Sequence record: MT135025.1
Length of the DNA stretch: 64,000 nucleotides
Reading direction: 5' to 3' (one strand)
This document shows, in pieces, positions 8,480-42,520 of this stretch. The notes under the pieces are model-generated. The model searched no databases. It worked only from the letters and a program-made list of their open reading frames with translations, and was not told the origin of the DNA. Within the stretch, counting starts at the first letter, position 1; each line of letters begins with the position of its first letter. Position numbers and translations under genes: made by a program.

Positions 8480-9349
8480 ATGAAACGTACACTATTATCG
8501 CACGCTGTGATGGCACAGGTTGCACTTCTGTCTTCTAAAGGTTACGGTGAAGACGACATTTCTCTAATGACGTCTTACAACGCAGTGGATGAGATTCCAG
8601 AACCTTTCCGCGGTCTGTATACTGAACAGGACGGTAAGCACGTTCTGTCAAAAGTTGTTGGTCTTAAGACACAAGACGACATCAACCGTTTGCAAGGTGC
8701 ATTGGACAAGGAGCGTAACGACCACAAGGCTGTGAAGGGTGCACTTGCGAAGTTAGGTGATCGTTCGATTGACGATGTACTTACCATCCTCGATAAGGTT
8801 CCAGCTTGGGAAGCACTTGAAGCACAAAGCGATCCGAGTAAGATTGACGAGCTTGTAAACGGTAAACTTTCGCAGCACACTGCACCGCTACAACGCCAAG
8901 TTACTGAGTTAACTACCGAGCGTGACGGTTACAAAGAGAAGTTCGAAGCGCTACAAACACAAGTTAAGACAGATAAGATCCGCGGTACGTTGAAGGACGC
9001 TGCGCTTAAAGCTAAAGCACTGCCAGAAGCTGCTGACGACATTGCAAACATGGGTCTAGGTTTGTTCGATGTGGACGACGCGGGCAATGTTGTGGTCAAA
9101 GCGGATGCTAAGGGTGTCACTCCGGGCATTATGCCTGAAGTATGGTTAAACGACCTGAAAGACAGCAAGCCGTTCTACTGGCCTGCATCGCAAGGTGCTG
9201 GCGGTCAAGGTGGTCAAGGTGGTGGCGGTCAAAACAACCCTTGGAAGCAAGAGACGCTAAACCTAACAGAGCAGGGTAAACTTGTTCAAACAAATCCAGC
9301 GTTAGCTCGTCAACTTGCACAAGCTGCTGGCGTAACTCCAACATGGTAA
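8480..9349 (+). CDS. Capsid scaffolding protein with an N-terminal leader
   Basis: Coiled coil, G-rich linker and NNPWKQETLNLTEQGKL C-terminal capsid-binding motif; between MuF and the capsid gene. Confidence 0.8.
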   Translation: MKRTLLSHAVMAQVALLSSKGYGEDDISLMTSYNAVDEIPEPFRGLYTEQDGKHVLSKVVGLKTQDDINRLQGALDKERNDHKAVKGALAKLGDRSIDDVLTILDKVPAWEALEAQSDPSKIDELVNGKLSQHTAPLQRQVTELTTERDGYKEKFEALQTQVKTDKIRGTLKDAALKAKALPEAADDIANMGLGLFDVDDAGNVVVKADAKGVTPGIMPEVWLNDLKDSKPFYWPASQGAGGQGGQGGGGQNNPWKQETLNLTEQGKLVQTNPALARQLAQAAGVTPTW

Positions 9350-9358
9350 AATGAATTG

Positions 9359-9418
9359 TTGCATTGACAACAATTATCCATTATATTTAAGGGACTGTCA
9401 TGGGGCAGTCCCTTTTTT
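9359..9418 (+). promoter_or_regulatory. Sigma70-like promoter overlapped by a terminator hairpin upstream of the capsid gene
   Basis: TTGCAT-17-TATATT (9359-9387); AAGGGACTG-N8-CAGTCCCTT-TTTT (9389-9418). Confidence 0.6.
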
Positions 9419-9482
9419 ACGTTAGCGGCCATGGGGTACGCGACATTATTTCGTTAATACGCCATAATAGAGGAGATATCCT

Positions 9483-10541
9483 GTGGCTAAACTGAATCCT
9501 ATTCTTCGCTCAATTGGTGCGGGTGAATCTGGTGTTGTACGTCTAGCGGACGTAGTTGTACCTCAAGTGTTTACCCCTTACGTACAGCAACAAACAGAAG
9601 AAAAATCACGCCTAATTCAATCTGGTGTGTTGGTGCGCGATGCGTTCTTGGACAACTTCCTAGCTGGGGCGGGTGCTACCATTAACGTTCCTGGCTGGAA
9701 GGACTTGGATAACGACGAAGAGAACTACTCTAACGACGACCCAAGTGCAAACAGCACTCCAAAGAAAATCGGTACTGCGACTGAAGTTGCAACTCGTATG
9801 AACCGCAACCAATCTTGGAGCTCAATGGACTTGACTGCGCAACTTATTGCGCGTGATCCAATGGCTGCAATTGGTGGTCGTGTAGCAAACTACTGGACAC
9901 GTCGTATGCAAGCGATGTTCATTGCTACCGTTCGCGGTGTGTTTGCGGATAACGCTGCTGATCCTGTTTCAGGTGAGCACGTTAAGAACGACCTTACCCA
10001 CGATATTTCTGGTACTGGTGCAGCTTCTGCGACAACTCGTTTCAACGGTTCTGCGTTCATTGATACGCTGACCACAATTGGTGATAGTGAAGACGATCTA
10101 GGTATCGTGTTCATGCACTCAATCGTGTATGCGCGTGCTAAGAAAAACAACCTTATCGACTTTATCCCTGATGCAACTGGTAAGGTGAACATCCCGACTT
10201 ACATGGGTCGTACTGTTATTGTTGATGATGGTCTAACGTCTACAACTGCTGGCGTGTACGAAACTTGGGTGTTCGGTCAAGGTGCATTCCGCCTAGGTGT
10301 TGGTACTCCAGAAGTTCCAACTGAAGTGGATCGTAAACCTTCTGCGGGTAACGGTTCAGGTCAAACTGTTCTGCACAACCGTGTTGAGTGGTCTATCCAC
10401 CCTGTGGGCCACGCTTACACAACCACTCCAGGCCAGTCTGGTCCAACTAACGCACAGTTGGCGTCCGGTGACAACTGGAAGCGTGTGTACGCAGAGCGTA
10501 AGATGATTAAGATGGCACGTCTAATCACTCGTGAAGCTTAA
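9483..10541 (+). CDS. Major capsid protein (HK97 fold)
   Basis: GTG start after GAGGAG; RLADVVVPQVF, INVPGW, DPMAAIG..VANYW, VFMHS, PTYMGRTVIVDD. Confidence 0.93.
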   Translation: MAKLNPILRSIGAGESGVVRLADVVVPQVFTPYVQQQTEEKSRLIQSGVLVRDAFLDNFLAGAGATINVPGWKDLDNDEENYSNDDPSANSTPKKIGTATEVATRMNRNQSWSSMDLTAQLIARDPMAAIGGRVANYWTRRMQAMFIATVRGVFADNAADPVSGEHVKNDLTHDISGTGAASATTRFNGSAFIDTLTTIGDSEDDLGIVFMHSIVYARAKKNNLIDFIPDATGKVNIPTYMGRTVIVDDGLTSTTAGVYETWVFGQGAFRLGVGTPEVPTEVDRKPSAGNGSGQTVLHNRVEWSIHPVGHAYTTTPGQSGPTNAQLASGDNWKRVYAERKMIKMARLITREA

Positions 10542-10572
10542 TTCACAACCGAGGGGTCTTTGACCCCTCAAG

Positions 10573-11223: not shown

Positions 11224-11235
11224 CTGGGGATAACT

Positions 11236-11424
11236 ATGGCGATAAAGCGCGGTGTTAAGGGTATTAAAAGACATCACCCAATGAACGGTTTACGTCATCC
11301 AGGATATAAATTAGCGGCGGGTCAATCTCGCCGCTTTATTGCATGGTCCGTACAGCAGAATGATTCGGTCAATGATGAACCTGTTGAACCTGTTGAGCCG
11401 GTTGTTGATGGTGACATTGTATAA
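11236..11424 (+). CDS. Small hypothetical protein
   Basis: ATG after GGGGA; EPV repeats at the C-terminus. Confidence 0.5.
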   Translation: MAIKRGVKGIKRHHPMNGLRHPGYKLAAGQSRRFIAWSVQQNDSVNDEPVEPVEPVVDGDIV

Positions 11425-11451: not shown

Positions 11452-11470
11452 TTTCGTTTTTGGAGGATTT

Positions 11471-15246: not shown

Positions 15247-17677
15247 TGTAGCTCGCCTCCAAATTAAGATTGACAGCTTGTCAGCGGAGATCGCTGCGTT
15301 ACGTTTGGACAAGGTAACTGGCGCATCTAAAAAGACGCAACGCGCGACTGGCGGGTTAAGCAAAGCATTTGCTGGCGCAACTGTGGTCACTGCTGCGTTC
15401 GCTGCTGCTGTCAAAGCCCTTTCTGTTGTTGCAGACGTAAGTAAACGCTTCCAGGATATGGAAGCTCGTCTTGTAACAGCTACAGGTTCAATGGATGGTG
15501 CTGCGATTGCAATGGAAGCAATCAAAGACCTTGCTGTTGAAACCCCCTACGACATTGAGCAAATTACCAACGGTTTTATTCGTCTTGCTAACTTGGGTTT
15601 AAGCCCATCTGAGCGAGCGCTTAGAAGTTACGGTAACACAGCTTCCGCGACTGGTAAATCCCTGAACCAGTTAGTTGAGGCGGTAGCTGACGCCGCAACG
15701 TTCGAGTTTGAACGTCTAAAAGAGTTTGGTATTAAAGCCAACCAAATGGGTGACCGTGTATCGTTTACGTTCCGCGGTGTGACCACAACTGTTGAGAAAT
15801 CTTCTAAAGCTGTAACAGACTACCTGACTGCACTTGGTGAGAACGAGTTCGCAGGTGAGATGGAACGCCGAATGGAAACGCTTGGCGGTGCTGTTTCCAA
15901 CTTGCAAGACCAGTTCACCATTGCAGTTAATAACATTGGTGAGTCCGGTTTAGCTGACCTAATGGAAGACGGTTTCCGTCGTGCCACCGATGCGCTTGAG
16001 CTGTTTAACGCTTCAATGGAATCCGGTGAAATGGGTGCACGTTTGGAGTTGGAAGCATCACGCTGGCAATTCCTTGCAGACGAAGCGTCCGGAGCGATGG
16101 ACTTCATTACCAAAATGTGGGATGACGCGCCCGGCGAGTGGAAGAAAGCTGCAACGGACGCAATACAGTTCATTATTGACTTGTGGACGTACCTACCGGA
16201 AAACATTGCGTATGTCCATAAGCGTATTATTATTGAGTTTAAGTACCTTGTCGGCGTAATCCAGCGTTACACTAGCAACATTGGTGAGCGTTGGGAAAAC
16301 ACATTTGACCATATCGTTGCTCGTGCGAAAGTTTACGCTGTTGCTATTGGTGACGCGATGGACCCGTTCTCAGATGGGTTCGATATGGAAGCTGCGCTCA
16401 CACGTGTTGACAAGTTCTTTGAGGGTGAAGCTAAACGTTTAGCAGTTAGCTATACGGATCTCAACAGTGAGCGGGACAAAGCGCTTGAGGGTATCAAGCT
16501 TGAGCGTGCTGTTGCAATTGATTCGTATGAGAAACAAAGTGCGGCTGTTAAGCGTTTGCGCGAACAGTACCTTAAAGAGCGCGAAGAGCGCCGAGCTACT
16601 GCGGGTGACCGTCTTGCACAGTTTGGACAAGACGAAGGTGGTGGTGCAACCCTAGCTGAACAGCGTGAAGCTGAGAAGAAAGCTAAAGAGCGTGAGAAAG
16701 AGTTTGAACGTCTTCAAGCTTACCTTCGCACAGAAGAAGAGACAATTCTTGAAAGTTACAACAACCGAATGCGTATTATTCTTGAGAATACGCAAGCGGG
16801 CAGTGACGCACGTAGAAACCTTCAACAAGAGTTAAACCAAAAGTTCCAAGAGGACTTACTTGGCGAGCAGGAAGTCTTAGATAATGATTACGCAACTAAG
16901 GAACAAAAGCTGCGTGACTATTGGGAACGCCGCCGCCAAATCATTATTGAGAATACGCAGCTAACCGAGGAACAGCGTACCGCACTGGAAGCGGAGCTAA
17001 CTAAGAAACGTGACGACCAGTTGCGCAAGTTAGAGCGTGAAAAGGTTAAATACGTTGTAAACACTTCTGGTAAGATGTTCGGGGATCTTGCGGGTCTTGC
17101 CGAACAGTTTGCAGGTAAGCAAAGCGGCATTTACAAGGTAATGTTCGCAGCGTCTAAAGCGTTCGCAATTGCTGACTCGATTATGAAAATTCAGCAAGGT
17201 ATTGCAAACGCGGCAGCTATGCCTTGGCCTGCTAACTTGGGTGCAATTGCATCAACTGTGGCTGCAACAGCGGGCATTGTTAACACCATTAGCTCAACTC
17301 AAATGAAGGGTTTCCGCAAAGGGGGATACACTGGTAACAGTGGTGTGAATGACGTTGCGGGTGTTGTGCATGGTAGGGAGTTCGTATTTGACGCAGAGTC
17401 GACAAGTCGTATTGGTAAGGACAACTTAGAAAGCTTGCGTAAGGGCGGAATGCCTAGTAACATGGGTAACGGTGGCAACGTTAAGCTGAACATTGTGGTC
17501 AATAACAATGCAGCCAACGTTGAAGTTGAAACTAAAACACAGGTTGTTGACGACGAGCTTAAAGTTGAATTTATTGTTAACCAAGCTAAGAATGAAATTG
17601 CAACAGAAATTCGAAGCGGTTACGGTTCTGTGACTGAGAGCTTAGAGCAGACCTACAGCTTAGGACGTACAGGCTAA
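15239..17677 (+). CDS. Tape measure protein
   Basis: 812 aa helical; ETPYDIEQIT tape-measure motif; GFRKGGYTG...AGVVHGREFV C-terminus. Confidence 0.92.
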   Translation: MADVARLQIKIDSLSAEIAALRLDKVTGASKKTQRATGGLSKAFAGATVVTAAFAAAVKALSVVADVSKRFQDMEARLVTATGSMDGAAIAMEAIKDLAVETPYDIEQITNGFIRLANLGLSPSERALRSYGNTASATGKSLNQLVEAVADAATFEFERLKEFGIKANQMGDRVSFTFRGVTTTVEKSSKAVTDYLTALGENEFAGEMERRMETLGGAVSNLQDQFTIAVNNIGESGLADLMEDGFRRATDALELFNASMESGEMGARLELEASRWQFLADEASGAMDFITKMWDDAPGEWKKAATDAIQFIIDLWTYLPENIAYVHKRIIIEFKYLVGVIQRYTSNIGERWENTFDHIVARAKVYAVAIGDAMDPFSDGFDMEAALTRVDKFFEGEAKRLAVSYTDLNSERDKALEGIKLERAVAIDSYEKQSAAVKRLREQYLKEREERRATAGDRLAQFGQDEGGGATLAEQREAEKKAKEREKEFERLQAYLRTEEETILESYNNRMRIILENTQAGSDARRNLQQELNQKFQEDLLGEQEVLDNDYATKEQKLRDYWERRRQIIIENTQLTEEQRTALEAELTKKRDDQLRKLEREKVKYVVNTSGKMFGDLAGLAEQFAGKQSGIYKVMFAASKAFAIADSIMKIQQGIANAAAMPWPANLGAIASTVAATAGIVNTISSTQMKGFRKGGYTGNSGVNDVAGVVHGREFVFDAESTSRIGKDNLESLRKGGMPSNMGNGGNVKLNIVVNNNAANVEVETKTQVVDDELKVEFIVNQAKNEIATEIRSGYGSVTESLEQTYSLGRTG

Positions 17678-18051
17678 TGATTGTTGCAGAATACCCTATT
17701 CATGAGCTACCGTACCCGCAGGACGCATCTGAAACTGTGGGTGCGTCCCACACCACAATAAAGAAGATGGTAAGCGGGCGTAGACGTGTATCTACGACCA
17801 TTCCTGGATACATTGGGGAAGCGACTCTGAAGTGGGACTTAACTGAGGATGAGCTTCGTTTCTTTTTGGGGTGGTGGCGTTGGATACTTGGTCGTGGCGG
17901 ATCCATTATCAAGTTTGAGCCAACATCAGATTTTGTTGCTGAGACTGGTCTTACGTATTGTATTCTTCGCAAGAATATGTTAAAAATAACACCTAAGGAC
18001 GCTGGCCACGCTGTGTCCGTTGGTGTTTATGTTGTTGAGGGTCCGCAATGA
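17677..18051 (+). CDS. Distal tail-like protein
   Basis: Position after the tape measure; MVSGRRRV, F..WW pattern. Confidence 0.55.
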   Translation: MIVAEYPIHELPYPQDASETVGASHTTIKKMVSGRRRVSTTIPGYIGEATLKWDLTEDELRFFLGWWRWILGRGGSIIKFEPTSDFVAETGLTYCILRKNMLKITPKDAGHAVSVGVYVVEGPQ

Positions 18052-18557
18052 GTTTCTATAGTGTTACATATCCGACATACCCTGTTGGGTTGCCTAATGC
18101 AAGCATGGGCAGTACACTCACAATTGAAACCAGTTCGGTACAGAACTCTGCAACTGCGGGTTATCCGTATTTAAAGACCCGCTTTGCCAACTATGGTTTT
18201 CATGGTAACTTAAAATTCCAATTTACAAACGATCAAATGAAGACGTTTTTGGAGTTTTGGAACAACACGTTAAGGAATGGGCGAATTGCATTTACATCTA
18301 ACAAGATTTATCTTCTTGGTGTGGCGGGGTTATACTATATCGCCCCACTTGGTGTATTACGCAAAGCAAAGGTGGCGCCCAATACGTGGTCAGTGAGTTT
18401 CCAAGTATATGGTTGGAACTTCCCAACACTTAGTGAGCAAGATGTATTGAACCGCTTTATTAGTGCTTCTACACTGGAGCGTCAAACAGCGCAAATTCAT
18501 TCTTACTTGAAGTCTTACTACGATTTAGGAGATCAGCCAAGTGGCAACATTACCTGA
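18048..18557 (+). CDS. Distal tail-like protein 2
   Basis: YP..LP, F.EFW...LRNGRIAF pattern; synteny. Confidence 0.55.
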   Translation: MSFYSVTYPTYPVGLPNASMGSTLTIETSSVQNSATAGYPYLKTRFANYGFHGNLKFQFTNDQMKTFLEFWNNTLRNGRIAFTSNKIYLLGVAGLYYIAPLGVLRKAKVAPNTWSVSFQVYGWNFPTLSEQDVLNRFISASTLERQTAQIHSYLKSYYDLGDQPSGNIT

Positions 18558-18765
18558 ACTTATTGAAAAGATGCGCGTGGACGTTAACGCGCTAGACACG
18601 ATATTGCTAGGTGACGCGAACGCAACCGCAACGGTTGACGGTAAAACTAAACCGAGTATTACTAAAGCGGTTGAAGAACGTTTAGACGGATACCGCACAA
18701 TTAGCACTTCAGCACCTTCCGGAGTTCCAAAGCGCGGACAGGAATGGATTGTAACTAGGAGTTAA
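18541..18765 (+). CDS. Short fibre anchor/adaptor protein
   Basis: Resembles fibre N-terminal anchors; ends STSAPSG..GQEW. Confidence 0.5.
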   Translation: MATLPELIEKMRVDVNALDTILLGDANATATVDGKTKPSITKAVEERLDGYRTISTSAPSGVPKRGQEWIVTRS

Positions 18766-18766
18766 C

Positions 18767-21460
18767 ATGCCTTCTTTATTCCTACCGGACGGCGATAGCT
18801 GGAAAGAAGTAAAAGAGTTCCACGTTGAGGACAAGGGCCAATGGAAGGAAGCTTCCATTCGCCTTGTCGAGCACAACGGCAAGTGGCGTGAGACTTTCAA
18901 CAATGAGGGTGTAAAGACCGATAACATTGTTGAAATCCACGAGCTTAAATTTCGCGCGGGTAACAAGGAACAAGGTGACTTACGCATCGAGGGGCAAGGT
19001 TTATCGGACATCATTCCAACAAAGCCTGCCGTTGGTGCAATGTATTCCTTCCGCTCCACCCTGCGGGACTACTTCGATAACTTTGGTAAAGTCGACCAGT
19101 TCGGCACTGAGTTGACTTTGCCTGCGGAGCAGGATGGGATTCCTTGCTACGCAATGGACGCAGCTAAACAACAGTATATGACCGCGAACAACTCAACTCG
19201 CGGTTATTACGACTTCTTGGGTTTAATTGGGTCTAATACTCCTTGGGGACATTGGGAGCTTGGCGGTAAGTTCAAACCATCAACATGGCCTAGCGGTCAA
19301 TACGACTCAATCTGTGTTTACTTTACGGGAACGCAGACGCAGTGTGTGAGCGTAGTCTACAACGGTGCAGGGACATTATTCGGCATTGTGCGTAACGGCT
19401 CGAAGTATACTGTGGTCACGCTTACCAATGCGGTTAAGCTTAACGAGTGGACGGGTTTTTGTTTGCGTCATAAGCAAGGTGGGCAACTCGAGCTGATGTT
19501 GCACGATAAACGCACACATAAAGCTCAACTGACCACAGGTTATTGGAAGCCCGCTCCGCGCATCCCGATTAAAATGGGTAACGGGTTTGCTTTCACCGCT
19601 GAAAAGGTTGCGGACGCTTTCTTCATGCGTAGTAACACACATGCGGATATTGACATTGTTGACAATGGCTTGCGTCTTAACTATACTGGAACTGCGTACC
19701 GAGGGTCTCAACCTTCGCATGAGATGGCTCCAAACACTGGTAAGTATTATATTGAAATCTTCCATGAGACTGCGTTTGACATGCACTACGGTGTTGCTGA
19801 GCCGGGAGCGCGTTTGGACATTGGTGCGGGTGTTGTTGGTTGGTGTGTAAACACAATTAACGGTCGTAAGTTTGACCATCAGACAGGTGGTGGTACAAAC
19901 TGGTCTACTGCAACACCACAAAACAGCACCATTGGGATGTTATACGACTCCGATAAGGGCACACTTGAAATTTACGTTGACGGTGTTAAGCGCCCTAACC
20001 CGTTCTGGGACAATGAGATTACTGTTCCGGTTAAGTTTATTATTTCTGGTCGTGCTAAGGACGCAACAACTCAAATCTTTGCTCCCCGCGTGAACTTAGA
20101 CCCGTCCACTTGGGCGCACAAACCAAATTACACTGATATTAAACCTGTGCCACTTTCGCGCGTTGTTGGTGGTATTGGGCAGCAAGAAACCTTTTTTACA
20201 GGGTATGTCAGCGACTTCTTTATCCGTAGCGCGCCAATGATTAATGATGCGCACATTTATGCGGTTATTGACCCGAAAGCACGCTTTAAGGTTAAATTCA
20301 CCAGTATTGACAAGGGTGATGTTTACGATGCAACCTCAAGCGTTATTATCCAAAAGGGTAATCACTGCATAATGACAGTTCCAAACGTACCTGTTGGCAA
20401 CTACTGGTTAACCGCCGAGAAAGAAGGGCAAGATACCTCAACCAAGAAGTTTTTCACAGTTACGCAGTTTAACCAAACTAACAAAGCGTTAGATATCAAT
20501 ATGGAAAGTTCCTCTATTGAGGAAATCCGTGACGGGTTAATTGTTGCTCATAAGGGTTGGGGTGGCACGAATGGTGGCTGTGTGCAGGACAACGTTCTGC
20601 TAGATATGAAACAGAAAATCATGCGCATTACCGCCTACGGAAACCTATACACTGGACCCGTCAAAGGGGTGGACCGTGTTGGTGTACCGAATGGGTTCAA
20701 CAAGCGGATTGGCGCATGTGTGGCCACACGTGATTATCACGGCCCTGGCTCCTATCGTGTGCTGTGTAAGTTCCCTGAAAAGACTGGTGTATGTTCCGCG
20801 TTTTGGACGTTCCACTATGAAGAGGGGTATCCAGGATCCCGCTTGTTCAATGAGCATAAGGCGGACGGGTTGCATGTTGCAGGTACAGAAGCTGACGGTT
20901 TTTACACTGTTCGAAACCACGAAATTGATATTGAGGTTCCAACAGCCTTAAAGACGGACAAAGACCAAGAGGAAGTGTCCTATCTGAACGCTCGTTTTAA
21001 CACGTGGCACGGTGAGCGACGCAACTGGGCGGTTAAGAATAAGGATGTACCTATACATGACCCAATGTACAGTCCTGTAAATGATCCAGCTTATTGGTCT
21101 GAGTACACGGATGATTTCATTAAGCACGATGTAAATCTAAATGATGGACAATATCACGAGGTGCGGTTTGATTGGCATCTTGACAGCGATCCGCGTGTGG
21201 TGTATTATGTAGATGGTGTGGAAAAGCATACAGTTCGCACTCACGTGCCTAACATTCCTGGGCGTTTTTGGGTTGGTTTATGGTTCCCAAGTGCGTCCAC
21301 ATTGTGGGCGGGTAAGAATGCGGATTGGGTTGTTCAACACATGGATGTTAAGCGTATTCAAATTATACCGTTTGAAAATGAAATTCCCAATGCACGTCAA
21401 ATCACTGAGACGTACCCTTGGGATGTATACCGAGACTTTAAGCACATAATCTATGAGTAA
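18767..21460 (+). CDS. Tail fibre/receptor-binding protein with LamG-like, SPRY-like and GH16 domains
   Basis: SPRY-like TGKYYIEI...TIGMLYDSDKGTLEIYVDG; GH16-like SAFWT...EIDIE (20921-20935), YHEVRFDW, VVYYVDG. Confidence 0.75.
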   Translation: MPSLFLPDGDSWKEVKEFHVEDKGQWKEASIRLVEHNGKWRETFNNEGVKTDNIVEIHELKFRAGNKEQGDLRIEGQGLSDIIPTKPAVGAMYSFRSTLRDYFDNFGKVDQFGTELTLPAEQDGIPCYAMDAAKQQYMTANNSTRGYYDFLGLIGSNTPWGHWELGGKFKPSTWPSGQYDSICVYFTGTQTQCVSVVYNGAGTLFGIVRNGSKYTVVTLTNAVKLNEWTGFCLRHKQGGQLELMLHDKRTHKAQLTTGYWKPAPRIPIKMGNGFAFTAEKVADAFFMRSNTHADIDIVDNGLRLNYTGTAYRGSQPSHEMAPNTGKYYIEIFHETAFDMHYGVAEPGARLDIGAGVVGWCVNTINGRKFDHQTGGGTNWSTATPQNSTIGMLYDSDKGTLEIYVDGVKRPNPFWDNEITVPVKFIISGRAKDATTQIFAPRVNLDPSTWAHKPNYTDIKPVPLSRVVGGIGQQETFFTGYVSDFFIRSAPMINDAHIYAVIDPKARFKVKFTSIDKGDVYDATSSVIIQKGNHCIMTVPNVPVGNYWLTAEKEGQDTSTKKFFTVTQFNQTNKALDINMESSSIEEIRDGLIVAHKGWGGTNGGCVQDNVLLDMKQKIMRITAYGNLYTGPVKGVDRVGVPNGFNKRIGACVATRDYHGPGSYRVLCKFPEKTGVCSAFWTFHYEEGYPGSRLFNEHKADGLHVAGTEADGFYTVRNHEIDIEVPTALKTDKDQEEVSYLNARFNTWHGERRNWAVKNKDVPIHDPMYSPVNDPAYWSEYTDDFIKHDVNLNDGQYHEVRFDWHLDSDPRVVYYVDGVEKHTVRTHVPNIPGRFWVGLWFPSASTLWAGKNADWVVQHMDVKRIQIIPFENEIPNARQITETYPWDVYRDFKHIIYE

Positions 21461-21950
21461 ATTAACCGCAGCACTTCAGGAGAGTTATGCGATTGGCGGA
21501 AACACTGACGAGTATTACGAAACGTTGGAAATCCGCCACCCGTCACTCTCACAAACATTGTACATTGTTCGAGCAATGCACCCAATTGAAGCAACGCTGG
21601 AAGACGGGAACAAGGTTACTTTTAAACCCGTTGGTTTCCGTGTTAAACTTCCAAGCGCTTCAAGTTACGGGAACATCAACTTGGACTTTGTTGTTGATAA
21701 TACAGAAGGTATTGCTATGTCCTATATCCAGGACACTGCAACATCAAACGAAGCACCTAGTGTGACATATCGCCCTTACTTAAAAGGGGACTTGAGTAAG
21801 CCACAAATGGTTCCTCCACTTAAGATGTTTATTAAAACACCGCGAGTGACAGACCAATCCATCTCGCTGCGTGCGAGTTTCTTTGACCTTGCTAACAAAG
21901 ACTTTCCAAATGACGATTACAATAGACAGCGCTTTCCGGGCATCGGCTGA
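21453..21950 (+). CDS. Tail tip protein (DUF1833-like)
   Basis: YYETLEIRHP..LYIVR, TF.PVGF.V.LP, V.YRPYL..DLS.P. Confidence 0.8.
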   Translation: MSKLTAALQESYAIGGNTDEYYETLEIRHPSLSQTLYIVRAMHPIEATLEDGNKVTFKPVGFRVKLPSASSYGNINLDFVVDNTEGIAMSYIQDTATSNEAPSVTYRPYLKGDLSKPQMVPPLKMFIKTPRVTDQSISLRASFFDLANKDFPNDDYNRQRFPGIG

Positions 21951-22365
21951 TGAATTTATCACCCAATGGGTCTTGAGCCGTACAAAATACAGCCCGTTGG
22001 AGTCCACAAAACATGCAAGCGATTGCTATGGTTTTGTTCATTCGTTTTATAAGGAAGTTGCAGGGGTTGAGCTCCCAACACTTAAAGACGAAGATATGTT
22101 AAGTTTGCTTACGCTGAGCAAAGCTTACGACAGGTTGTTACCGTCAAGTTTAGAGAACGGTTGGGAAGAGGTAGCGGAGCCGCAACCGTATGGCATTGTG
22201 GTCATGGGGCGCAATAATCGCGTTTACCATGTGGGGATTTATCACCCTGACGGTGTGGTGTACCATGTAACTAGAAACGAGGGTGTTGTCGGTCGTCCCC
22301 TACGTCTTATTAAGATGGGTTTGGGGTACAGTTACTTCGCTCATTACGTTTACACAGGCAAGTAA
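21871..22365 (+). CDS. Tail tip NlpC/P60 cysteine peptidase (start uncertain)
   Basis: DCYGFV...GVELP, HVGIY, VYH catalytic residues. Confidence 0.8.
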   Translation: MRVSLTLLTKTFQMTITIDSAFRASADEFITQWVLSRTKYSPLESTKHASDCYGFVHSFYKEVAGVELPTLKDEDMLSLLTLSKAYDRLLPSSLENGWEEVAEPQPYGIVVMGRNNRVYHVGIYHPDGVVYHVTRNEGVVGRPLRLIKMGLGYSYFAHYVYTGK

Positions 22366-22366
22366 T

Positions 22367-25300
22367 ATGAATATTGTTATTACCGAGCATAAGGATCACT
22401 TTAAACCCAATGACCACACGGTTACTGAGTTTGTCACTTGTGCTACCACAATCCGCGGAGTGTTACAGGAACGCTTTGAGGGTTTTGTTGAGTTTGACGG
22501 GCCGACGATTGTTGTGCTTGATGGTGTGCCCCGTTTACGTGCGGAATGGGACGACGAGCTTGTTAAGGAGGGGTCACACCTATCCATTGCAGCCGTTCCA
22601 GGCACAGGTATTGAGGTTGTTGTAATGGCTGTTATTGCGGTGGCTGCTGCTGCGTATGCTGTATATGCGGTGAACAACCTGCCCGATACTAATACGGTTG
22701 AGCGACCAAAATCTAAACCTGTGTACACACTTGAGGGGGAGTCTAACATTGCTAAGTTAGGTCAGCCAATCGAGGTCCCATACGGTCGTAACCGTTGGTG
22801 GCCTGCATACGCTTCTCGTCCGTTTACACGTTTCCAGGACGACAACCAATTCTTGTATCAGTTGTTCTGTTTGGGACAGGGTAGTTACGACAATGTGGAA
22901 GTGCGTATCGAGGACACGCTGATTAACAACTTCCAAGAGGTGCAATGGGAGCTATACCCTCCAGGCACAGCGGCGAGTATGTTCCCAGACAGTGTGGTCA
23001 CATCTAATGAAACTGCGGGGTTGGAGTTATTCGGTACGAACGAGAGCCAGCACAAGACCTATGGTCCGTTCATTGTTAACCCACCTAACACCAAGACCAA
23101 CCGCATCGAGATTGACGTAGTAATGCCTGAGGGTATGTACTACATGAAAGACGATGGTGGTTTGGAATACCGCGAAGCTCGTGTTATCTTTGAAGTGCAA
23201 ATAATTGACGACCAAGGGAACCCGACAGGCCAGTGGACAAAGATTGCAGATAGAACATACCGCTATCGCACAACGGAAGCAATTCGCAGAACAATTGCCG
23301 TAACGGTTGCGTCTGCGCGTTACCAAATTCGCGGTCGACGCGCTAACAGTGCGGATACAAGCTACCGTTCTGGTAATAAAATCACTTGGGAGGGTACACG
23401 CGCCGTATTACCTTCCACTAAATTGTACGGTAACGTGACACTATTAGCTGTCGCAATTCGTGCAACCAACAACTTAAACAGCGGGAGTTCTAACCGCATT
23501 AATGTAACAGCAACGCGAAAAATCCCTGTGTTTGAGGGTGGTAAATGGGTTACTAAGGCATCGCGATCCGTTGTATGGGCTGCTGTGGATGTGCTTCGCA
23601 ATAGTGAGTATGGGGGTCAAATCCCGCAACAGTACATTGACATGGATAAACTCAAGTTGCTGGACACTGAATTAACGTCCCGTAACATTTTCTTTGACTA
23701 TATTTTCACGCAAAAGACCAAGGTTTGGTCCGCGCTAAAGTTAATCCTAAAGGTGGCACGTGCGGAGCCAATTGTCATGCTACCACTCATTTCAGCGTTC
23801 CGGTATGAGAAGAAAAGCATCCCTGCGGCTGTCTTCACACCGGATAACATTGAAGAGGGGTCATTTGAGTGGTTGGTAAACTACCCCGACCCACTTGATT
23901 ACGATGGGTTGCGTGTTACATACGTTGACCACACTAAGTGGAAAGAAGACGTTGTGGACTGCATACCTCCTGGCTCTGATGGTAAGCGGTTGAAAGCTGT
24001 TGAGCTGTTTGGTTGTGCAGACCGTAACAACGCTTATCACGAAGGGATGTACATGGCAATGACCCAACGCAAGGTTCGTGAGACTGTCAAGTTTAAAACA
24101 GGGCGCGAAGGTTTTATCCCCGTCCGCGGGGACATGGTTGCATTGAGCTATCCTATTCCTAAGTGGGGTGATCACGCATGGGTAACTGAAATTGCGGACG
24201 ATAAGAAAACCATCACATTTGACAGGAATTTAGATTGGGGTAGCGGACAGCACGTCCTGTTATTGCGCTTGGACAACGGGCAGGGTAACGGACCGCATAA
24301 TGTGGTCAAAGGATCAACCCCTAACGTTGCGGTACTAGCTGAACCATTGCCAAACATTAGCTTCTCCACAAAAATTGGACGCGAGCCTGTGTACGCATTG
24401 TTTGGCAAGGCGGGTGAGTTTGCTCGTTACTTGCGCGTGGAAAATACCGTTGCGGACGCTAACGACACGGTTGCAATTACGTGCAGTAATTACGTATCGG
24501 ACTTGGATCAGTTTGATAATGCAACCGCTCCAGCAAGCACCTCAGACGTAACTGTACCAACTGTGCCGGACTTGCCTAATATTCCGTATGTAACGGTGAG
24601 TAAGATTCCAGGCGATTACAGTCGAGTGAATGTGTATTGGGGTTCTGCGTTAGGGGCGAAAAGTTACAACATACAAGTGTCCTATGATGGGGGAACAACA
24701 TACCGTCACGTTGCAAGTACGGACGCAACCAACTATACACTAATCCTAGAGCGTAGCGGTACAATTCACGTTCGTGTTAGTGCTGTGAACGTTGGTGCGG
24801 GCCCTTGGAAGGTGTGGACGGGTCAGGTTGGTGAGGCAACTAACAAACCGTTCCCAGTATCCGGTCTTGCACTAGCGTTCCCGTTTGTTGGTAAAACAAT
24901 TGCGCTTCAATGGAACCGTGCAATTGATGCGAACGACTACGTTATTGAGGTGTACGGTCTACCTAACGACAACCTCTTAACAACTCGATATAGTAGTGGT
25001 GTATCGCTTAACATTACACTATCCGAAGCTATTGCTGGCAACTATGTGTCACGTGCTTACCGTTTCCGAGTTTACGGTCGCAACTCGAAGGGTTGGAGTG
25101 AAACTGCTGCGAGCGTGGATGTTGCTAACCCTGCACCTCGTAAGTTAGCGTTACCAACATCTGTTCAAATCGCAGAGACCTCGACAACAGCGACGTTCCG
25201 CGTTACGTGGGAGCAGCTACCGGACGACGACATTGTTGCCTACCGTGTATGGGGCTCTCAAACTGACGGGTTTACACCAAGCGATTCGAACAAGTTCATG

Positions 25301-36066: not shown

Positions 36067-36750
36067 TTATTCTGCGTCTTTAGCTGCGTTAGCTGCTTTA
36101 GCTGCTTTTTCAGCGGCTGCTGCTTCAGCTTTAGCTTTCTTTTCAGCTTCTTTAGCTGCTTTTGCTTCAGCTGCTTTAGCTTCTTTTTCCGCTTTAGCTG
36201 CTGCACGCTCTTCAGCTTTACGCTTTTTCTCAGCTTCTTTTTCAGCTTTAGCAGCTTCACGTTCAGCTTTCTTAGCAGCGCGTTCTTCTTCGCGTGCTTT
36301 CTTAGCCGCTTCTTTTTCAGCTTTCTTAGCTTCTTTAGCAGCTTCTTTCTCTGCTTTTTCAGCCATTTGCTTTTCAGACATGATGCGACCAGTTACACCG
36401 TGGAATTTACGCCATGCAGCGTACTCACAACGGACGTTACCTGCGTTAAGACCTTCAGCGTCAGTAACCACAAGTAGATCTGCAACCGCTACCGGAGCCT
36501 GTTTCTTAGCTGACATTTCGTCCGCGATAGCCCATACGCGACCACATAGTGTGTCAGGGCGTGGACGTGTTACACCGTTTTGAGAAGGCATTTTAGGCTT
36601 TTCAACTTTTTCTTTCTTAGCAGTTGCTTCACCTTCAGTAGCTGCGCCTGCTGCTTCAGTGTTTGCTTCAGTGTTTGCTTCAGGTTCTGCTTCAGTACCG
36701 AAACCAGTTGATGCGAAAAGTGGAAGTGCCAAAAGTGCTAGTTTGTTCAT
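36067..36750 (-). CDS. Putative nucleoid/histone-like protein: leader, small helical domain and Lys/Ala/Glu-rich tail
   Basis: TRPRPDTLCGRVWAIAD...EYAAWRK domain; ~85 aa of KAE repeats. Confidence 0.65.
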   Translation of the reverse strand: MNKLALLALPLFASTGFGTEAEPEANTEANTEAAGAATEGEATAKKEKVEKPKMPSQNGVTRPRPDTLCGRVWAIADEMSAKKQAPVAVADLLVVTDAEGLNAGNVRCEYAAWRKFHGVTGRIMSEKQMAEKAEKEAAKEAKKAEKEAAKKAREEERAAKKAEREAAKAEKEAEKKRKAEERAAAKAEKEAKAAEAKAAKEAEKKAKAEAAAAEKAAKAANAAKDAE

Positions 36751-41052: not shown

Positions 41053-41534
41053 GATCCTTTATCCTTAATGTGACGCTTTTTACCCCCACGGTAAACAGCT
41101 TTCTGCTTCTTCTTAGATTTGTACAACTTTAGGCGCTCCTTAGACCATTCAATAACAAACTCACATTGCTCAGCATTAAACTGACCTATGTGGCAATCTT
41201 CAAACTTAATGTTCATTGATGCAGCGAGTGAGGCGTAAGCGTGTACACGTGCACAATACATGTAACGCTTCCATATTTTATCAAATACACGGTGAGCTTC
41301 TTGACGTAACTTACCAGTCTCACGGTCGCACATGAAACCTTTGGGATTGCGGGAACCTTCGTGGCACGCAACCAAAGCACCGCAAGAACCACACAACCAA
41401 ATGTAAGGCCAGTTTCCGCGTTCCTTGCCGTATACAACGCGATGGTTTACGAACTGCACGTGGTCATGCCCACATGCGTCGCAGCTAGTTGGTTCTGGAA
41501 GTTGGGAACGTTGGTGCATTATTTTACTCTCCAT
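41046..41534 (-). CDS. Zinc-finger protein (DUF3268-like)
   Basis: CDACG, WLCGSCGALVACH, AHRVFDKIWK, CHIGQF. Confidence 0.85.
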   Translation of the reverse strand: MESKIMHQRSQLPEPTSCDACGHDHVQFVNHRVVYGKERGNWPYIWLCGSCGALVACHEGSRNPKGFMCDRETGKLRQEAHRVFDKIWKRYMYCARVHAYASLAASMNIKFEDCHIGQFNAEQCEFVIEWSKERLKLYKSKKKQKAVYRGGKKRHIKDKGSW

Positions 41535-41553
41535 AATTACGAATACAGGGGGT

Positions 41554-41587
41554 ATTGTAACCCCCTGTATTAAACTATGCTAGACTA
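41554..41587 (-). promoter_or_regulatory. TAGTCTAG-N20-TACAAT promoter module
   Basis: -10 box is exactly the loop of ACAGGGGGT/ACCCCCTGT. Confidence 0.75.
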
Positions 41588-41599
41588 AGTCTTGCGAAC

Positions 41600-42520
41600 T
41601 TATTGTTGAGCCCATGGAGGGTTGCCACCTTGTGCAGCTTGCTGAGCGTTTGCATCAGACTGCACGTTGCTTGGATTACCCTGACCGTTGTCTTGAACCG
41701 GAGCTTGCTGTTGTTGCTGCTGCTGCGGTGCGGACTGTTCTTGCTGCTGCGGTGCAGAGTTTTGCCAAGGTTGCTGCTGAACTTCACCACCTTGCGGCGC
41801 TGCTTCTTGCTGTGGTGCTGGCTGTTGCTGCTGTGCAGGCTGCTGCTCGGTTGGTTGCTGCCACTGCTGCTGTTGTACCGGCTGTTGCTGTTGCTGTTGC
41901 TGCTGTTGTGGTGCCTGTTGTTGCTGCTGTGGTGCGTTCCATTGCTGCTGTTGCTGCACTGGTTGCTGTTGCTGCTGTGCACCACCGTTCCAACCTTGTT
42001 GCTGTTGAGGCGCTTGCTGCTGACCGCCGAATTGCTGCTGTTGCGGAGCTTGTTGACCGCCACCCGCACCGTTCGCCGCGCGGTAGCCTTTAATTTCGTT
42101 ACGCTGTTCGTAACCGTCTTGTGGCTTAGACAGACCAACTTTCACTTCCATTGGAATACCGTGAAGCTGCATTGTGTCTTGTAGCTGCATCACGTTAGTT
42201 GCGTGACAGATAGCTGACAGTGTGCGTTGTGCAATTTCAACCGCAGTTTGGTTCGGGTTGTTTAGGTTCAAGCGATCCCAAAGCTTACGACCTGCGTACT
42301 GCTGAGGTGCAATAACTTCAAGTGTTAGCAGGATGTGCGAACCGTTGTTAGTGCTGTTCGGTTTCTCTTCAGAGTCAACGATGCGTGCAACGTACCAACC
42401 AAGAGGCAAGTTCTCAAACGCTTCGTTTGGAGAAACTTGGTTAGCGTCAAACATTCCGCCAAGACCTGCGCCTGCACCGATAGAAGAAAGAACTGCGATA
42501 GTAAGTGCTTTAAGTTTCAT
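41600..42520 (-). CDS. DUF669-type ssDNA-binding protein with an N-terminal leader and a Gln-rich tail
   Basis: FDANQVSP..LP.GWY...I..SE.K, GRKLWDRLNL.NPNQTA, NEIKGY; ~130-aa Q/P/A-rich C-terminus. Confidence 0.8.
   Translation of the reverse strand: MKLKALTIAVLSSIGAGAGLGGMFDANQVSPNEAFENLPLGWYVARIVDSEEKPNSTNNGSHILLTLEVIAPQQYAGRKLWDRLNLNNPNQTAVEIAQRTLSAICHATNVMQLQDTMQLHGIPMEVKVGLSKPQDGYEQRNEIKGYRAANGAGGGQQAPQQQQFGGQQQAPQQQQGWNGGAQQQQQPVQQQQQWNAPQQQQQAPQQQQQQQQQPVQQQQWQQPTEQQPAQQQQPAPQQEAAPQGGEVQQQPWQNSAPQQQEQSAPQQQQQQQAPVQDNGQGNPSNVQSDANAQQAAQGGNPPWAQQ

What the first reader, a model, noticed from the sequence alone, without database searches (positions are those of the whole stretch)
8480..42520. 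Shared N-terminal leader [LF]-x-S-x-G-[AFY]-G on four unrelated proteins: candidate leader-processing system
Seen in sequence: scaffold MKRTLLSHAVMAQVALLSSKGYG|E (8480-8548), capsid MAKLNPILRSIGAG|E (9483-9524), histone-like protein MNKLALLALPLFASTGFG|TE (36697-36750) and DUF669 SSB MKLKALTIAVLSSIGAG|A (42470-42520). Each has a basic start, a hydrophobic stretch and S-x-G-x-G. The codons differ (TCA/TCT, GGT/GGC), so conservation is at the protein level. From recall of family N-termini, scaffold, capsid and SSB start their usual folds only after this motif, so it looks like an add-on. Established: leader cleavage of scaffold and capsid is known in staphylococcal phage 80alpha (host Prp). Inference: a common cleavage or targeting signal spanning structural and replication proteins. 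The head module has no recognisable prohead protease, but the genome encodes an HslV-like protease.
Basis: partly seen in the sequence, partly recalled or inferred. Interest (0 to 1): 0.8.

Follow-up and report, generated by a model that had tools for sequence, protein, structure and literature searches.

The report
Shared leader peptide on phage proteins
Four unrelated proteins of this Vibrio phage (capsid, scaffold, a DNA-binding protein and the single-strand-DNA-binding protein) really do start with the same short add-on peptide, and its end motif changes in step in all of them from one phage lineage to the next, which points to an undescribed common processing or targeting step that does not depend on the phage's HslV-like protease.

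Summary
Window bases 1 to about 49500 are a 58-kb Vibrio siphophage of the Queuovirinae. Its scaffold, major capsid protein (MCP), a KAE-rich DNA-binding-type protein and the DUF669 SSB each carry a 14-23 residue N-terminal add-on ending G-x-G. Each add-on stops where leaderless homologues begin. In 15 related lineages the last five leader residues of scaffold and MCP match within a genome far more than between genomes (0 of 100,000 shuffles). The motif is lineage-specific: G-x-G, S-A-x-I-G, P-L-R-A-G, P-R-G, V-A-G, P-A-R-A-H-A. The same lineage motif reappears on the DNA-binding protein or the SSB in several lineages. DNA similarity does not explain this. The HslV link is not supported as a general mechanism. 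The P-L-R-A-G and P-A-R-A-H-A lineages have leaders but no HslV-like gene was found in them. Only the window's own clade has one, in 3 of 3 lineages, which counts as one evolutionary event. No prohead protease or Prp was found. Best reading: a shared pro-sequence or recognition tag read by one co-evolving partner and probably removed after the invariant Gly. It resembles the 80alpha capsid/scaffold leaders but works without Prp and extends to replication proteins. Cleavage is inferred, not shown.

The parts
8480..8548 (+). Scaffold leader: 23 aa with a basic start, a hydrophobic stretch and the end motif S-S-K-G-Y-G
   Evidence: phrog_206 and Pfam Phage_scaffold matches start only at about aa 32. 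Leaderless homologues start 3-7 aa before the conserved core.
8549..9349 (+). Scaffolding protein body (phrog_206; weak PF06810)
9483..9524 (+). MCP leader: 14 aa, GTG start, end motif R-S-I-G-A-G, not hydrophobic enough for a Sec signal
   Evidence: G14 is invariant in 11 leader-bearing MCPs. The junction coincides with the start of leaderless homologues and with residue 3-4 of SPP1 gp13.
9525..10541 (+). Major capsid protein body (Gp13-like, PF20036; phrog_247)
36697..36750 (-). Leader of the KAE-rich DNA-binding-type protein: 18 aa, end motif S-T-G-F-G
   Evidence: Orthologues in PaMx25 and R7M have no leader. Orthologues in pVco-14, ALK and the L179 phage carry their own lineage's motif.
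36067..36696 (-). Body of that protein: acidic linker, a conserved 70-aa helical domain (aa 54-123), then a roughly 100-aa KAE-rich single helix. It lies next to tRNA-Pro and the 7-deazaguanine gene cluster.
42470..42520 (-). SSB leader: 17 aa, end motif S-S-I-G-A-G
   Evidence: DUF669 starts at aa 24. Leaderless SSBs start at the junction. SSB leaders carrying the local motif were found independently in L104 and L178.
41600..42469 (-). DUF669 single-strand DNA-binding protein body with a Q/P-rich C-terminal tail
44260..44835 (-). HslV/proteasome-beta-like Ntn hydrolase. It is not part of the leader system in general; it co-occurs with leaders only inside the window's clade.
   Evidence: PF00227 scores 28.1 bits against a cut-off of 22.4, and phrog_1040 also matches. 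The protein starts M-T-T. A 30%-identical syntenic homologue exists in L178. No homologue was found in any other fetched locus.
5723..8453 (+). Portal (5723-7303) and MuF-like minor head protein (7284-8453). These are head-module context of the SPP1/80alpha type; no protease gene lies between portal and MCP.

Best explanation
The four N-termini are true add-on leaders that act as one shared recognition tag.

Shown: they are translated. They end exactly where the leaderless versions of each protein begin. Their last 4-6 residues are held alike among unrelated proteins of one genome and change together between lineages.

Inferred: one partner with lineage-specific specificity reads this tag. The tag is most likely a pro-sequence removed by endoproteolysis after the invariant small residue (Gly, rarely Ala). 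That would release capsid, scaffold, SSB and the DNA-binding protein with the same N-termini as their leaderless relatives. This is functionally the arrangement of staphylococcal phage 80alpha, whose homologous capsid and scaffold carry 13-14 residue leaders cut by one protease. Here there is no Prp, the motif drifts with the phage lineage, and abundant DNA-binding replication proteins are included.

The partner is unidentified. The HslV-like protease is not required, because leader-bearing lineages lack it. Phages of one host species use different motifs, so a phage-encoded or self-recognising partner is favoured over a strictly specific host protease.
For: 1. The starts are real: each has an RBS, and the MCP has no alternative start.
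2. The junction coincides with the N-terminus of leaderless homologues for the MCP, the SSB, the scaffold and the KAE-rich protein.
3. The motif is lineage-specific and shared within genomes.
 - Window: G-x-G on four proteins.
 - R29Z: G-A-G, G-F-G.
 - L170/L178/L179 phage: S-A-x-(I/L/V)-G on four proteins.
 - pVco-14, ALK, K251 and AQKL99: P-(L/M)-R-A-G on scaffold and MCP, and also on the KAE-rich protein in pVco-14 and ALK. (L/M)-R-A-G occurs only at those three places in all six-frame ORFs of pVco-14.
 - L073/L104: P-A-R-A-H-A on scaffold, MCP and SSB only.
 - Further scaffold/MCP pairs.
4. Within-genome identity of the last 5 residues is 3.40 against 1.75 between genomes, and 0 of 100,000 shuffles reach it.
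5. Codons differ and DNA similarity is near background.
6. L172 and L174 carry MCP bodies 80-82% identical to the window's but a leader of their own genome's R-A-G type.
7. The -1 residue is Gly in nearly all of about 30 leaders, and G14 is invariant in the MCP alignment.
8. Precedent: 80alpha (PMC5744158).
Against: - Cleavage has not been observed. The published BA3/CA8 virion LC-MS/MS gives only coverage figures (MCP 88.6 and 90.6%), which fit either a cleaved or an intact N-terminus.
- No protease shared by all leader-bearing phages was found.
- Gly followed by D/N/S/T/E could simply be a helix stop plus N-cap, that is, a hinge of an uncleaved tag.
- In 80alpha the scaffold leader is needed for assembly but its cleavage is dispensable, so a tag function without obligatory cleavage is plausible here too.
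- I placed the junctions by alignment, and the lineages are related, so the permutation P-value is conditional on those choices.
Confidence: 0.5

Rival explanations
1. One reading: the phage HslV-like Ntn protease (44260-44835) is the leader peptidase that cuts after the S-x-G-x-G motif.
For: - The gene looks catalytically competent. It has Thr right after Met, and the conserved D, K and G-S-G positions are kept in a 30%-identical homologue.
- Every lineage of the window's clade that could be checked has both the gene and four leaders: the window/CA8/R31B group, R29Z and the L170-L179 phage.
- The switch from R to G or a small residue at -3, and the SSB leader, coincide with this clade.
- BA3 gp4, its orthologue, was detected by MS in a crude virion preparation.
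Against: - pVco-14 and ALK, read over the whole genome, carry co-varying leaders but have no homologue.
- None was found in the fetched parts of the L031, L035 and L073 contigs, about 40 of 56-60 kb each. L104 has an SSB leader without the gene in the 19 kb around it.
- The clade-level co-occurrence is a single evolutionary event.
- HslV-type proteases are known as processive degraders working with an unfoldase and preferring hydrophobic P1 residues, not as site-specific Gly-P1 endopeptidases (my own knowledge).
- No HslU-like partner was seen in the phage.
Confidence: 0.12
2. The leader is an uncleaved tag: an N-terminal helix ending in a Gly hinge. It would bind a common phage factor or other leaders, co-localising or co-chaperoning capsid, scaffold and abundant DNA-binding proteins. 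It stays on the mature proteins.
For: - Co-variation only requires a common binding partner, not cleavage.
- Gly followed by D/N/S/T/E is a typical helix stop plus N-cap.
- In 80alpha the scaffold N-terminal sequence is essential for assembly while cleavage is dispensable, and a common-chaperone role was proposed.
- The short window MCP leader has an i, i+3, i+4, i+7 hydrophobic pattern, read directly.
Against: - Long hydrophobic leaders (22-35 aa) on 415 capsid subunits and on a soluble SSB would be awkward if retained.
- The most conserved position is exactly at the junction with the leaderless form, which is what a cleavage site looks like.
Confidence: 0.25
3. The leaders are genuine Sec/SRP-type signal peptides. 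They would give membrane targeting or export, with cleavage by host signal peptidase I.
For: - Scaffold, KAE-rich-protein and SSB leaders have a basic start, a hydrophobic core (best 8-residue Kyte-Doolittle mean 2.0-2.8) and small residues at -1 and -3 in the G-x-G, A-H-A and A-F-A lineages. The first mature residues are acidic.
Against: - MCP leaders of the Vibrio lineages are short and not hydrophobic (0.2-1.5), yet keep the motif.
- The commonest motif has Arg or Pro at -3 (R-A-G, P-R-G), which violates the -3/-1 rule. The -1 residue is Gly rather than the usual Ala (rule from my own knowledge).
- The cargoes are a capsid protein, a scaffold and an SSB, which act in the cytoplasm.
- A generic signal peptidase would not require the same five residues on every protein of a genome.
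Confidence: 0.08
4. Chance resemblance, or mis-called starts with the true starts downstream.
For: - The SSB has an internal Met at residue 23.
- The motif was defined post hoc.
- Leaderless relatives have an in-frame non-coding L-(N/D/E)-P-(I/V) upstream of the MCP start that resembles the window leader.
Against: - The MCP has no downstream start codon before the conserved core.
- All four upstream starts have an RBS, while the internal SSB Met has a poor one.
- The phenomenon is replicated in at least 15 lineages with different motifs.
- Expected counts are 0.39 and 0.002 against 4 observed.
Confidence: 0.03

Closest known systems
Staphylococcus phage 80alpha capsid (gp47) and scaffold (gp46) leaders cut by the host cysteine protease Prp (MEROPS C108)
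   Same: - The head module is homologous: portal, MuF-like minor head protein, PF06810-type scaffold and an SPP1 gp13/80alpha-type MCP.
- Both capsid and scaffold carry a short N-terminal add-on with a shared motif (13-14 aa in 80alpha; 14 aa on the window MCP).
- The phage has no prohead protease gene.
- In related staphylococcal phages the motif also appears on non-homologous proteins (PMC5744158).
   Different: - The 80alpha motif copies the host L27 extension (cut between F and A) and is fixed by host Prp. Proteobacteria lack Prp and long L27 (PMC9405229), and no PF04327 hit was found in the phage.
- Here the cut or hinge residue is Gly, and the motif differs between phages of one host species (window G-x-G against ALK P-L-R-A-G).
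- Many leaders are hydrophobic and resemble signal peptides.
- An SSB and another DNA-binding-type protein are included.
T4 prohead protease gp21 with its shared cleavage motif and the capsid-targeting sequence of internal proteins; phiKZ gp175 likewise (from my own knowledge)
   Same: One short motif is shared by the major capsid protein, the scaffold and small DNA-associated proteins.
   Different: - Those phages encode a recognisable prohead protease in the head module, and the tagged proteins are packaged in the head.
- Here no such protease is found.
- The cleaner CA8 virion proteome contains neither the SSB nor the KAE-rich protein.
- The T4 and phiKZ motifs end in Glu, not Gly.
Adenovirus protease (adenain) substrates: capsid precursors, the histone-like core protein pVII, pre-mu and pre-terminal protein share (M/I/L)-X-G-G|X or (M/I/L)-X-G-X|G sites (from my own knowledge)
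   Same: Structural, DNA-condensing and replication proteins of one virus share a Gly-based processing motif read by one viral enzyme.
   Different: - It is a eukaryotic virus with an unrelated capsid and a clan CE cysteine protease that is absent here.
- The P4/P2 rules do not fit: the window has S or R at the position corresponding to P4 and variable residues at P2.
Sec-type signal peptides and double-glycine (C39-cleaved) bacteriocin leaders (from my own knowledge)
   Same: The leaders have a basic start, a hydrophobic core and a small residue at -1. Like double-glycine leaders, they end in Gly.
   Different: - The cargoes are cytoplasmic.
- Arg or Pro is frequent at -3.
- The -2 residue is not Gly/Ala-restricted (Y, F, I, R, P, H).
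- MCP leaders are not hydrophobic.
- No C39 peptidase or transporter is encoded.

Membership tests
80alpha/Prp-type capsid-scaffold leader | Both capsid and scaffold of an SPP1/80alpha-type head module carry a short N-terminal add-on with a common motif | tested here: met
80alpha/Prp-type capsid-scaffold leader | The motif copies the L27 N-terminal extension (hydrophobic ...L-Q-F-F, cut before A) | tested here: not met
   Window leaders end G-x-G followed by E/T/A. The 80alpha and L27 sequences are in PMC9405229.
80alpha/Prp-type capsid-scaffold leader | A Prp (C108, PF04327) protease is available, from host or phage | tested here: not met
   No PF04327 hit appeared in any scanned phage ORF. 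Proteobacteria are listed as lacking Prp and long L27. The Vibrio host genome itself was not searched.
80alpha/Prp-type capsid-scaffold leader | The leader is physically removed from the mature proteins | not testable with these tools
   Only coverage percentages are published for BA3/CA8 virions. The tryptic map shows they cannot decide.
Sec-type signal peptide cut by signal peptidase I | Tripartite n-h-c organisation with a hydrophobic core | tested here: inconclusive
   Met for the scaffold, KAE-rich-protein and SSB leaders (KD8 2.0-2.8). Not met for the window and R-A-G-clade MCP leaders (0.2-1.5).
Sec-type signal peptide cut by signal peptidase I | Small uncharged residues at -3 and -1 | tested here: not met
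   This holds for the G-x-G, A-H-A and A-F-A lineages, but the commonest motifs are R-A-G, R-P-G and P-R-G.
T4-type capsid-targeting / prohead-protease substrates | A phage-encoded prohead protease in the head module | tested here: not met
   Portal, MuF, scaffold and MCP are contiguous with no protease family hit. The only hint is a weak phrog_595 match inside the MuF-like protein.
T4-type capsid-targeting / prohead-protease substrates | Tagged non-capsid proteins are packaged in the virion | tested here: inconclusive
   The CA8 virion proteome lacks the SSB and the KAE-rich protein. The BA3 preparation contains them together with many replication enzymes, so contamination is likely.
HslV / proteasome beta (for 44260-44835) | Pfam PF00227 above the gathering score, and an N-terminal Thr nucleophile after Met | tested here: met
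   PF00227 scores 28.1 bits against a cut-off of 22.4, and phrog_1040 also matches. The M-T start is conserved in the L178 homologue.
HslV-like gene as leader peptidase | The gene co-occurs with leaders across phages | tested here: not met
   Present only in R31B, R29Z and L178 among 178 loci (2.69 Mb). Absent from the whole genomes of pVco-14 and ALK, which have leaders. Not found in the loci fetched from the L031, L035 and L073 contigs, L104 included.
Double-glycine leader (C39 peptidase) | G-G, G-A or G-S at -2/-1, and a cognate C39 peptidase or ABC transporter | tested here: not met
   The -2 residue is Y, A, F, T, I, R, P or H. No peptidase_C39 hit was found.
DUF669 phage SSB (for 41600-42520) | PF05037 above the gathering score | tested here: met
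   59.2 bits against a cut-off of 21; phrog_6015 SSB also matches.
Histone-like / HU-type protein (for 36067-36750) | A recognisable histone, HU or H1 fold or family match | tested here: not met
   No Pfam family matched. The AF2 model (pLDDT 87) shows a small helical domain plus a 100-aa single helix. No significant PDB fold match was found: best E 0.45, with weak resemblances to winged-helix-like folds.

The most novel reading that the evidence does not exclude
These phages run a virus-encoded, co-evolving leader-recognition system that marks capsid, scaffold and the abundant DNA-coating proteins (SSB and a KAE-rich DNA-binding protein) with one cleavable address tag. In function it would be a bacterial-virus counterpart of adenovirus protease or T4 capsid-targeting maturation. 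It would use an unrecognised enzyme or receptor; in the window's clade this could be the HslV-like Ntn hydrolase acting as a site-specific maturation protease. That would imply that replication and assembly proteins are brought to one site or compartment, or are co-processed on one timetable.
Probability: 0.15. Interest if true: 0.85.

Novelty: new variant of a known kind. Interest (0 to 1): 0.72.

Why it matters
Shared, cleavable leaders on capsid and scaffold are so far a Firmicute-phage curiosity tied to the host ribosomal protease Prp. Here the same architecture appears in phages of Gram-negative hosts that lack Prp. The motif drifts in step across unrelated proteins and reaches the SSB and a DNA-binding protein.

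That pattern is the signature of a specific recognition step nobody has described. It gives a directly testable handle on how these siphophages coordinate head assembly with DNA metabolism. Leader swaps, Gly(-1) mutants, pull-downs and N-terminal proteomics would all address it.

About 10% of 150 diverse relatives of the scaffold family carry such leaders. The phenomenon is therefore not confined to one phage. Automated annotation that trims or ignores these N-termini will miss it.

Tried and rejected
1. DNA-level repeat or translation-initiation cassette: local alignment of the four start regions is barely above the background of other gene starts, and codons differ. Rejected.
2. HslV co-occurrence: the word-indexed protein search suggested the gene was private to the CA8 group. 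This was a false negative. Walking a 59.5-kb Logan contig found a 30%-identical syntenic homologue. The conclusion was revised to clade-restricted, not general.
3. Phyletic search for a protease present in leader-bearing but not leaderless phages: only clade markers emerged. These were a DUF3820-like 178-aa protein at 1632-2168, an amidase, tail genes, DUF3268 and the product of 43327-43821. None is protease-like.
4. The NlpC/P60 tail-tip protein (21871-22365) as peptidase: CA8/R31B-type phages with identical leaders appear to carry a different tail-tip module, judging by the annotated gene sizes. Rejected.
5. MuF-like protein as protease: there is only a weak phrog_595 match and no PDB sequence relative. 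Unsupported.
6. Alignment columns of portal, MuF or scaffold that segregate with R or G at -3: abandoned, because the G-type lineages form one clade for those genes.
7. Inferring cleavage from published MS coverage: the tryptic map shows 90.6% coverage fits both states.
8. Literature searches for signal-peptide-like or processed capsid and scaffold proteins in these phages found nothing relevant.
9. Fold search to name the 'histone-like' domain: no significant hit.

Full report
WHAT THE WINDOW IS

The window is 100% identical to part of GenBank MT135025, 'Vibrio phage V07'. That is a 349-kb UNVERIFIED_ORG record filed under Schizotequatrovirus. Bases 1 to about 49500 are about 99% identical to the 58-kb Vibrio parahaemolyticus/harveyi siphophages AL-2, CA8, BA3 and R31B, and 85% identical to R29Z. 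R31B is classified in the Queuovirinae, the phages with 7-deazaguanine DNA. From about 49.5 kb the GC content drops from 0.47 to 0.40. That DNA is 97% identical to the unrelated phage KIT05. The record is therefore a concatenation of several phages. The finding lies wholly in the siphophage part.

THE OBSERVATION

The four N-termini read as reported. Two of the genes are on the minus strand, and the capsid gene starts with GTG. Each start has a Shine-Dalgarno-like sequence 7 nt upstream.

The capsid gene has no other in-frame start before its conserved core. The SSB has an internal Met at residue 23, but its ribosome-binding site is poor.

The strict motif occurs four times among all 435 six-frame ORFs of at least 40 aa, only at these N-termini. 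Among 58 real proteins, SxGxG within the first 25 residues is seen 4 times against 0.39 expected (P about 0.002). The strict motif has 0.002 expected. The DNA around the four starts is hardly more alike than background, and codons differ.

THE LEADERS ARE ADD-ONS

- MCP: most of the 120 listed MCP homologues (about 60% identical, for example Pseudomonas phages PAJD-1 and NP1) start M-A-S-G-V-T-R-I-A-D. The window MCP continues E-S-G-V-V-R-L-A-D right after G-A-G.
- MCP structure: the solved SPP1 gp13 structures align from MCP residue 19 to chain residue 3-4.
- SSB: leaderless DUF669 SSBs start M-A-G-L-N-F or M-A-Q-L-N-F. This matches the window's A-G-L-G-G-M-F after G-A-G.
- Scaffold: of the 150 best cluster representatives in a 1.84-billion-protein library, about 90% start 3-7 residues before the conserved core. 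About 14 carry a basic-hydrophobic leader ending in Gly (rarely Ala) followed by D/E/N.
- KAE-rich protein: orthologues in PaMx25 and R7M have no leader and place their KAE-rich region N-terminally instead.

THE KEY RESULT: CO-VARIATION

Related phages carry leaders on the same proteins but with a different end motif, and that motif is the same within each genome.

- Vibrio phages pVco-14, K251 g3, ALK and AQKL99 have P-(L/M)-R-A-G on scaffold and MCP.
- pVco-14 and ALK also have it on the KAE-rich protein. (L/M)-R-A-G occurs only at these three N-termini in all six-frame ORFs of pVco-14.
- A GC-rich IMG/VR phage (loci L073 and L104, one contig) has P-A-R-A-H-A on scaffold, MCP and the SSB, and at no other real N-terminus in the fetched loci.
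- A 59.5-kb Logan contig (L170, L176, L178, L179) has S-(S/A)-x-(I/L/V)-G on all four proteins.
- Further scaffold/MCP pairs: S-I-G-A-G and S-A-G-A-G (L171); A-R-A-G and L-R-A-G (L172); K-R-A-G and M-R-A-G (L174); M-M-I-G and M-G-V-G (L175); S-P-R-G and L-P-R-G (L173); V-V-A-G and L-V-A-G (L031); A-R-P-G and L-R-A-G (L035).

Over 15 lineages, the last five leader residues of scaffold and MCP share 3.40 identities within a genome against 1.75 between genomes. None of 100,000 shuffles reaches that value, and the result holds with the invariant -1 position left out.

Two caveats apply. I set the junctions by alignment to leaderless homologues, and the lineages are related.

R29Z, at 85% DNA identity, shows what is constrained. 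G(-3) and G(-1) never change, while -2 is free (Y, A, F, T).

A NATURAL SWAP

L172 and L174 have MCP bodies 80-82% identical to the window's. Their portal, MuF and scaffold, however, belong to the R-A-G clade (43-53% identical). Their MCP leaders are R-A-G, like their own scaffolds. The leader motif follows the resident genome, not the protein it is attached to.

THE HslV-LIKE GENE

The product of 44260-44835 matches PF00227 above threshold and phrog_1040, and it starts M-T-T.

The word-indexed search found homologues only in the CA8 group. This was a sensitivity artefact. The L170-L179 phage has a syntenic 182-aa homologue (30% identity, E 2e-14) that keeps the Thr, D, K and G-S-G positions.

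tblastn with both proteins against all 178 fetched loci (2.69 Mb) hits only R31B, R29Z and L178.

- The window's clade has the gene together with four leaders in 3 of 3 lineages.
- pVco-14 and ALK, read over the whole genome, have leaders but lack the gene.
- No homologue lies in the two stretches fetched from each of the L031, L035 and L073 contigs, which cover about 40 of 56-60 kb each.
- None of the 73 loci centred on the KAE-rich gene contains it.

The leader system therefore exists without this protease. The co-occurrence inside one clade is a single event and weak evidence.

NO OTHER PROTEASE

Pfam and PHROG scans covered the head genes and all the small unassigned ORFs of the siphophage. 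The genes with an evident role from relatives' annotation or from their pVco-14 orthologues (polymerase, helicase, primase, ligase, the queuosine genes, the large tail genes) were not scanned. The scans found no Prp, no S14/S49/S77/S78 prohead protease and no C39 peptidase.

The only other peptidase-like gene is an NlpC/P60 tail-tip protein. Going by the annotated gene sizes, the tail-tip module of CA8/R31B-type phages, which carry identical leaders, looks different. I did not test those phages for the NlpC/P60 protein.

Genes shared by leader-bearing phages but absent from leaderless ones are clade markers without protease features. The pVco-14-specific genes also gave nothing.

SIGNAL PEPTIDE?

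The scaffold, SSB and KAE-rich-protein leaders look like Sec signals: a basic start, a hydrophobic core, a small -1 residue and an acidic mature end.

Four points count against that reading:
- The MCP leaders of the Vibrio lineages are short and not hydrophobic, yet keep the motif.
- The commonest motif has Arg or Pro at -3.
- The -1 residue is Gly rather than Ala.
- The cargoes are cytoplasmic.

A generic signal peptidase also would not enforce five matching residues within a genome. ALK and the window phage both infect V. parahaemolyticus yet use different motifs. This argues against a strictly specific host enzyme. It favours a phage-encoded partner or leader-leader recognition.

PROTEOMICS

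- CA8 virions contain MCP (90.6% coverage), the MuF-like protein and portal. They contain no scaffold, SSB or KAE-rich protein.
- The BA3 preparation contains these three along with many replication enzymes, so it was probably contaminated (PMC7047879).
- No peptide lists are available, and the tryptic map shows the coverage figures fit either state of the N-terminus.
- Packaging of the SSB or the KAE-rich protein into heads is therefore not supported, and cleavage is untested.

THE 'HISTONE-LIKE' PROTEIN

An AlphaFold2 model built on 52 sequences (pLDDT 87) shows:
- a disordered leader and acidic linker;
- a beta-hairpin plus three helices (aa 55-116);
- one roughly 100-residue KAE-rich helix.

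The PDB fold search gives nothing significant, only weak resemblances to winged-helix-like folds. DNA binding is plausible but unproven, and the histone label is not supported. The gene sits next to tRNA-Pro and the deazaguanine cluster in all relatives.

COMPARISON WITH KNOWN SYSTEMS

The closest precedent is 80alpha.
- Its homologous capsid and scaffold lose 13-14 N-terminal residues to host Prp at a motif copied from ribosomal protein L27.
- The scaffold leader is essential for assembly while cleavage is dispensable.
- The motif also occurs on non-homologous proteins in related phages (PMC5744158).
- Proteobacteria lack Prp and long L27 (PMC9405229).

The present case shares the architecture. 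It differs in residue chemistry (Gly at -1), in lineage-specific drift of the motif, in the signal-like hydrophobicity and in including replication proteins.

T4 gp21 with its capsid-targeting sequences, and adenovirus protease, are functional analogies only (my own knowledge). Their defining features are not met here: a recognisable viral protease and packaged substrates.

VERDICT

- The add-on and common-signal reading is supported.
- The HslV mechanism is not supported as the general explanation. I put it at about 0.12 as a clade-specific role.
- The most likely mechanism, at about 0.5, is a shared pro-sequence read by one co-evolving partner and removed after the invariant Gly.
- An uncleaved tag is the main rival, at about 0.25.
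- The responsible factor is unknown, and that is the interesting part.

Noticed in passing
window 1-64000 (junction near 49500): The source record (MT135025, 'Vibrio phage V07', UNVERIFIED_ORG, filed as Schizotequatrovirus) is a concatenation of different phages. Bases 1 to about 49500 are a Queuovirinae siphophage. Bases from about 49500 to 64000 are 97% identical to the 50-kb phage KIT05 (VPp1-like), with GC falling from 0.47 to 0.40. Upstream parts of the record carry T4-like baseplate genes.
   Followed up: partly
window 9486-9506; L003:2501-2536; L019, L025, L045, L071 upstream of their MCP starts: Leaderless relatives have a non-coding, in-frame L-(N/D/E)-P-(I/V)-like stretch just upstream of the MCP ATG. 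One of them has an intervening stop codon. The stretch resembles the window leader's K-L-N-P-I-L. This suggests a conserved 5'UTR element, and that the MCP leader arose or was lost by a shift of the start codon.
   Followed up: partly
L172:10001-11068 and L174:2273-3358 versus window 9483-10541: The head module is mosaic. These two metagenomic phages have MCPs 80-82% identical to the window's, while their portal, MuF and scaffold are only 43-53% identical.
   Followed up: partly
window 43327-43821 (-); L179:7787-8227: This replication-module protein (orthologue of CA8/BA3 gp7, 144 aa from an internal Met) is among the best-covered proteins in both published virion proteomes (46-70% coverage). 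It has its own hydrophobic N-terminus ending A-N-C or N-N-C, and a weak PriA 3'-DNA-binding-domain match. It could be a lipoprotein-like or membrane-associated DNA-binding protein.
   Followed up: no
window 41600-42100 (-) and 36067-36370 (-): The SSB ends in a roughly 150-residue Q/P-rich low-complexity tail. The KAE-rich protein ends in a roughly 100-residue predicted single alpha-helix. The scaffold has a G/Q-rich patch. These are features typical of proteins that form condensates or act as spacers.
   Followed up: no
window 9391-9420: A GC-rich hairpin followed by a T-run (terminator-like) lies between the scaffold and MCP genes, just upstream of the MCP ribosome-binding site.
   Followed up: no
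window 17677-25441: The tail-tip module here (DUF1833-type, an NlpC/P60 protein, and large proteins of 897 and 1052 aa) is shared with pVco-14. Its gene sizes differ from those annotated in R31B and CA8, although the rest of the genome is about 99% identical. This suggests host-range module exchange.
   Followed up: partly
window 9826-10541 in the source record's annotation: The V07 record annotates the MCP from an internal start (717 nt), cutting off the leader and about 100 residues. R31B, CA8 and BA3 annotate the full 1059-nt GTG-start gene.
   Followed up: yes
window 50712-51185 (+), in the KIT05-like part: An unrelated protein of the other phage has a classical hydrophobic N-terminus ending A-V-A-G followed by E-N-D-E. 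Gly at -1 followed by acidic residues is therefore not unique to the siphophage leaders.
   Followed up: no
window 1632-2168 (+): A 178-aa protein upstream of terS has an F-G-(K/R)-(Y/F)-(K/R)-G ... Y-L-x-W motif. From memory this resembles DUF3820; there was no Pfam or PHROG hit. It is present in all Vibrio-clade leader-bearing phages checked and in 0 of 28 leaderless loci. It is probably a clade marker.
   Followed up: partly
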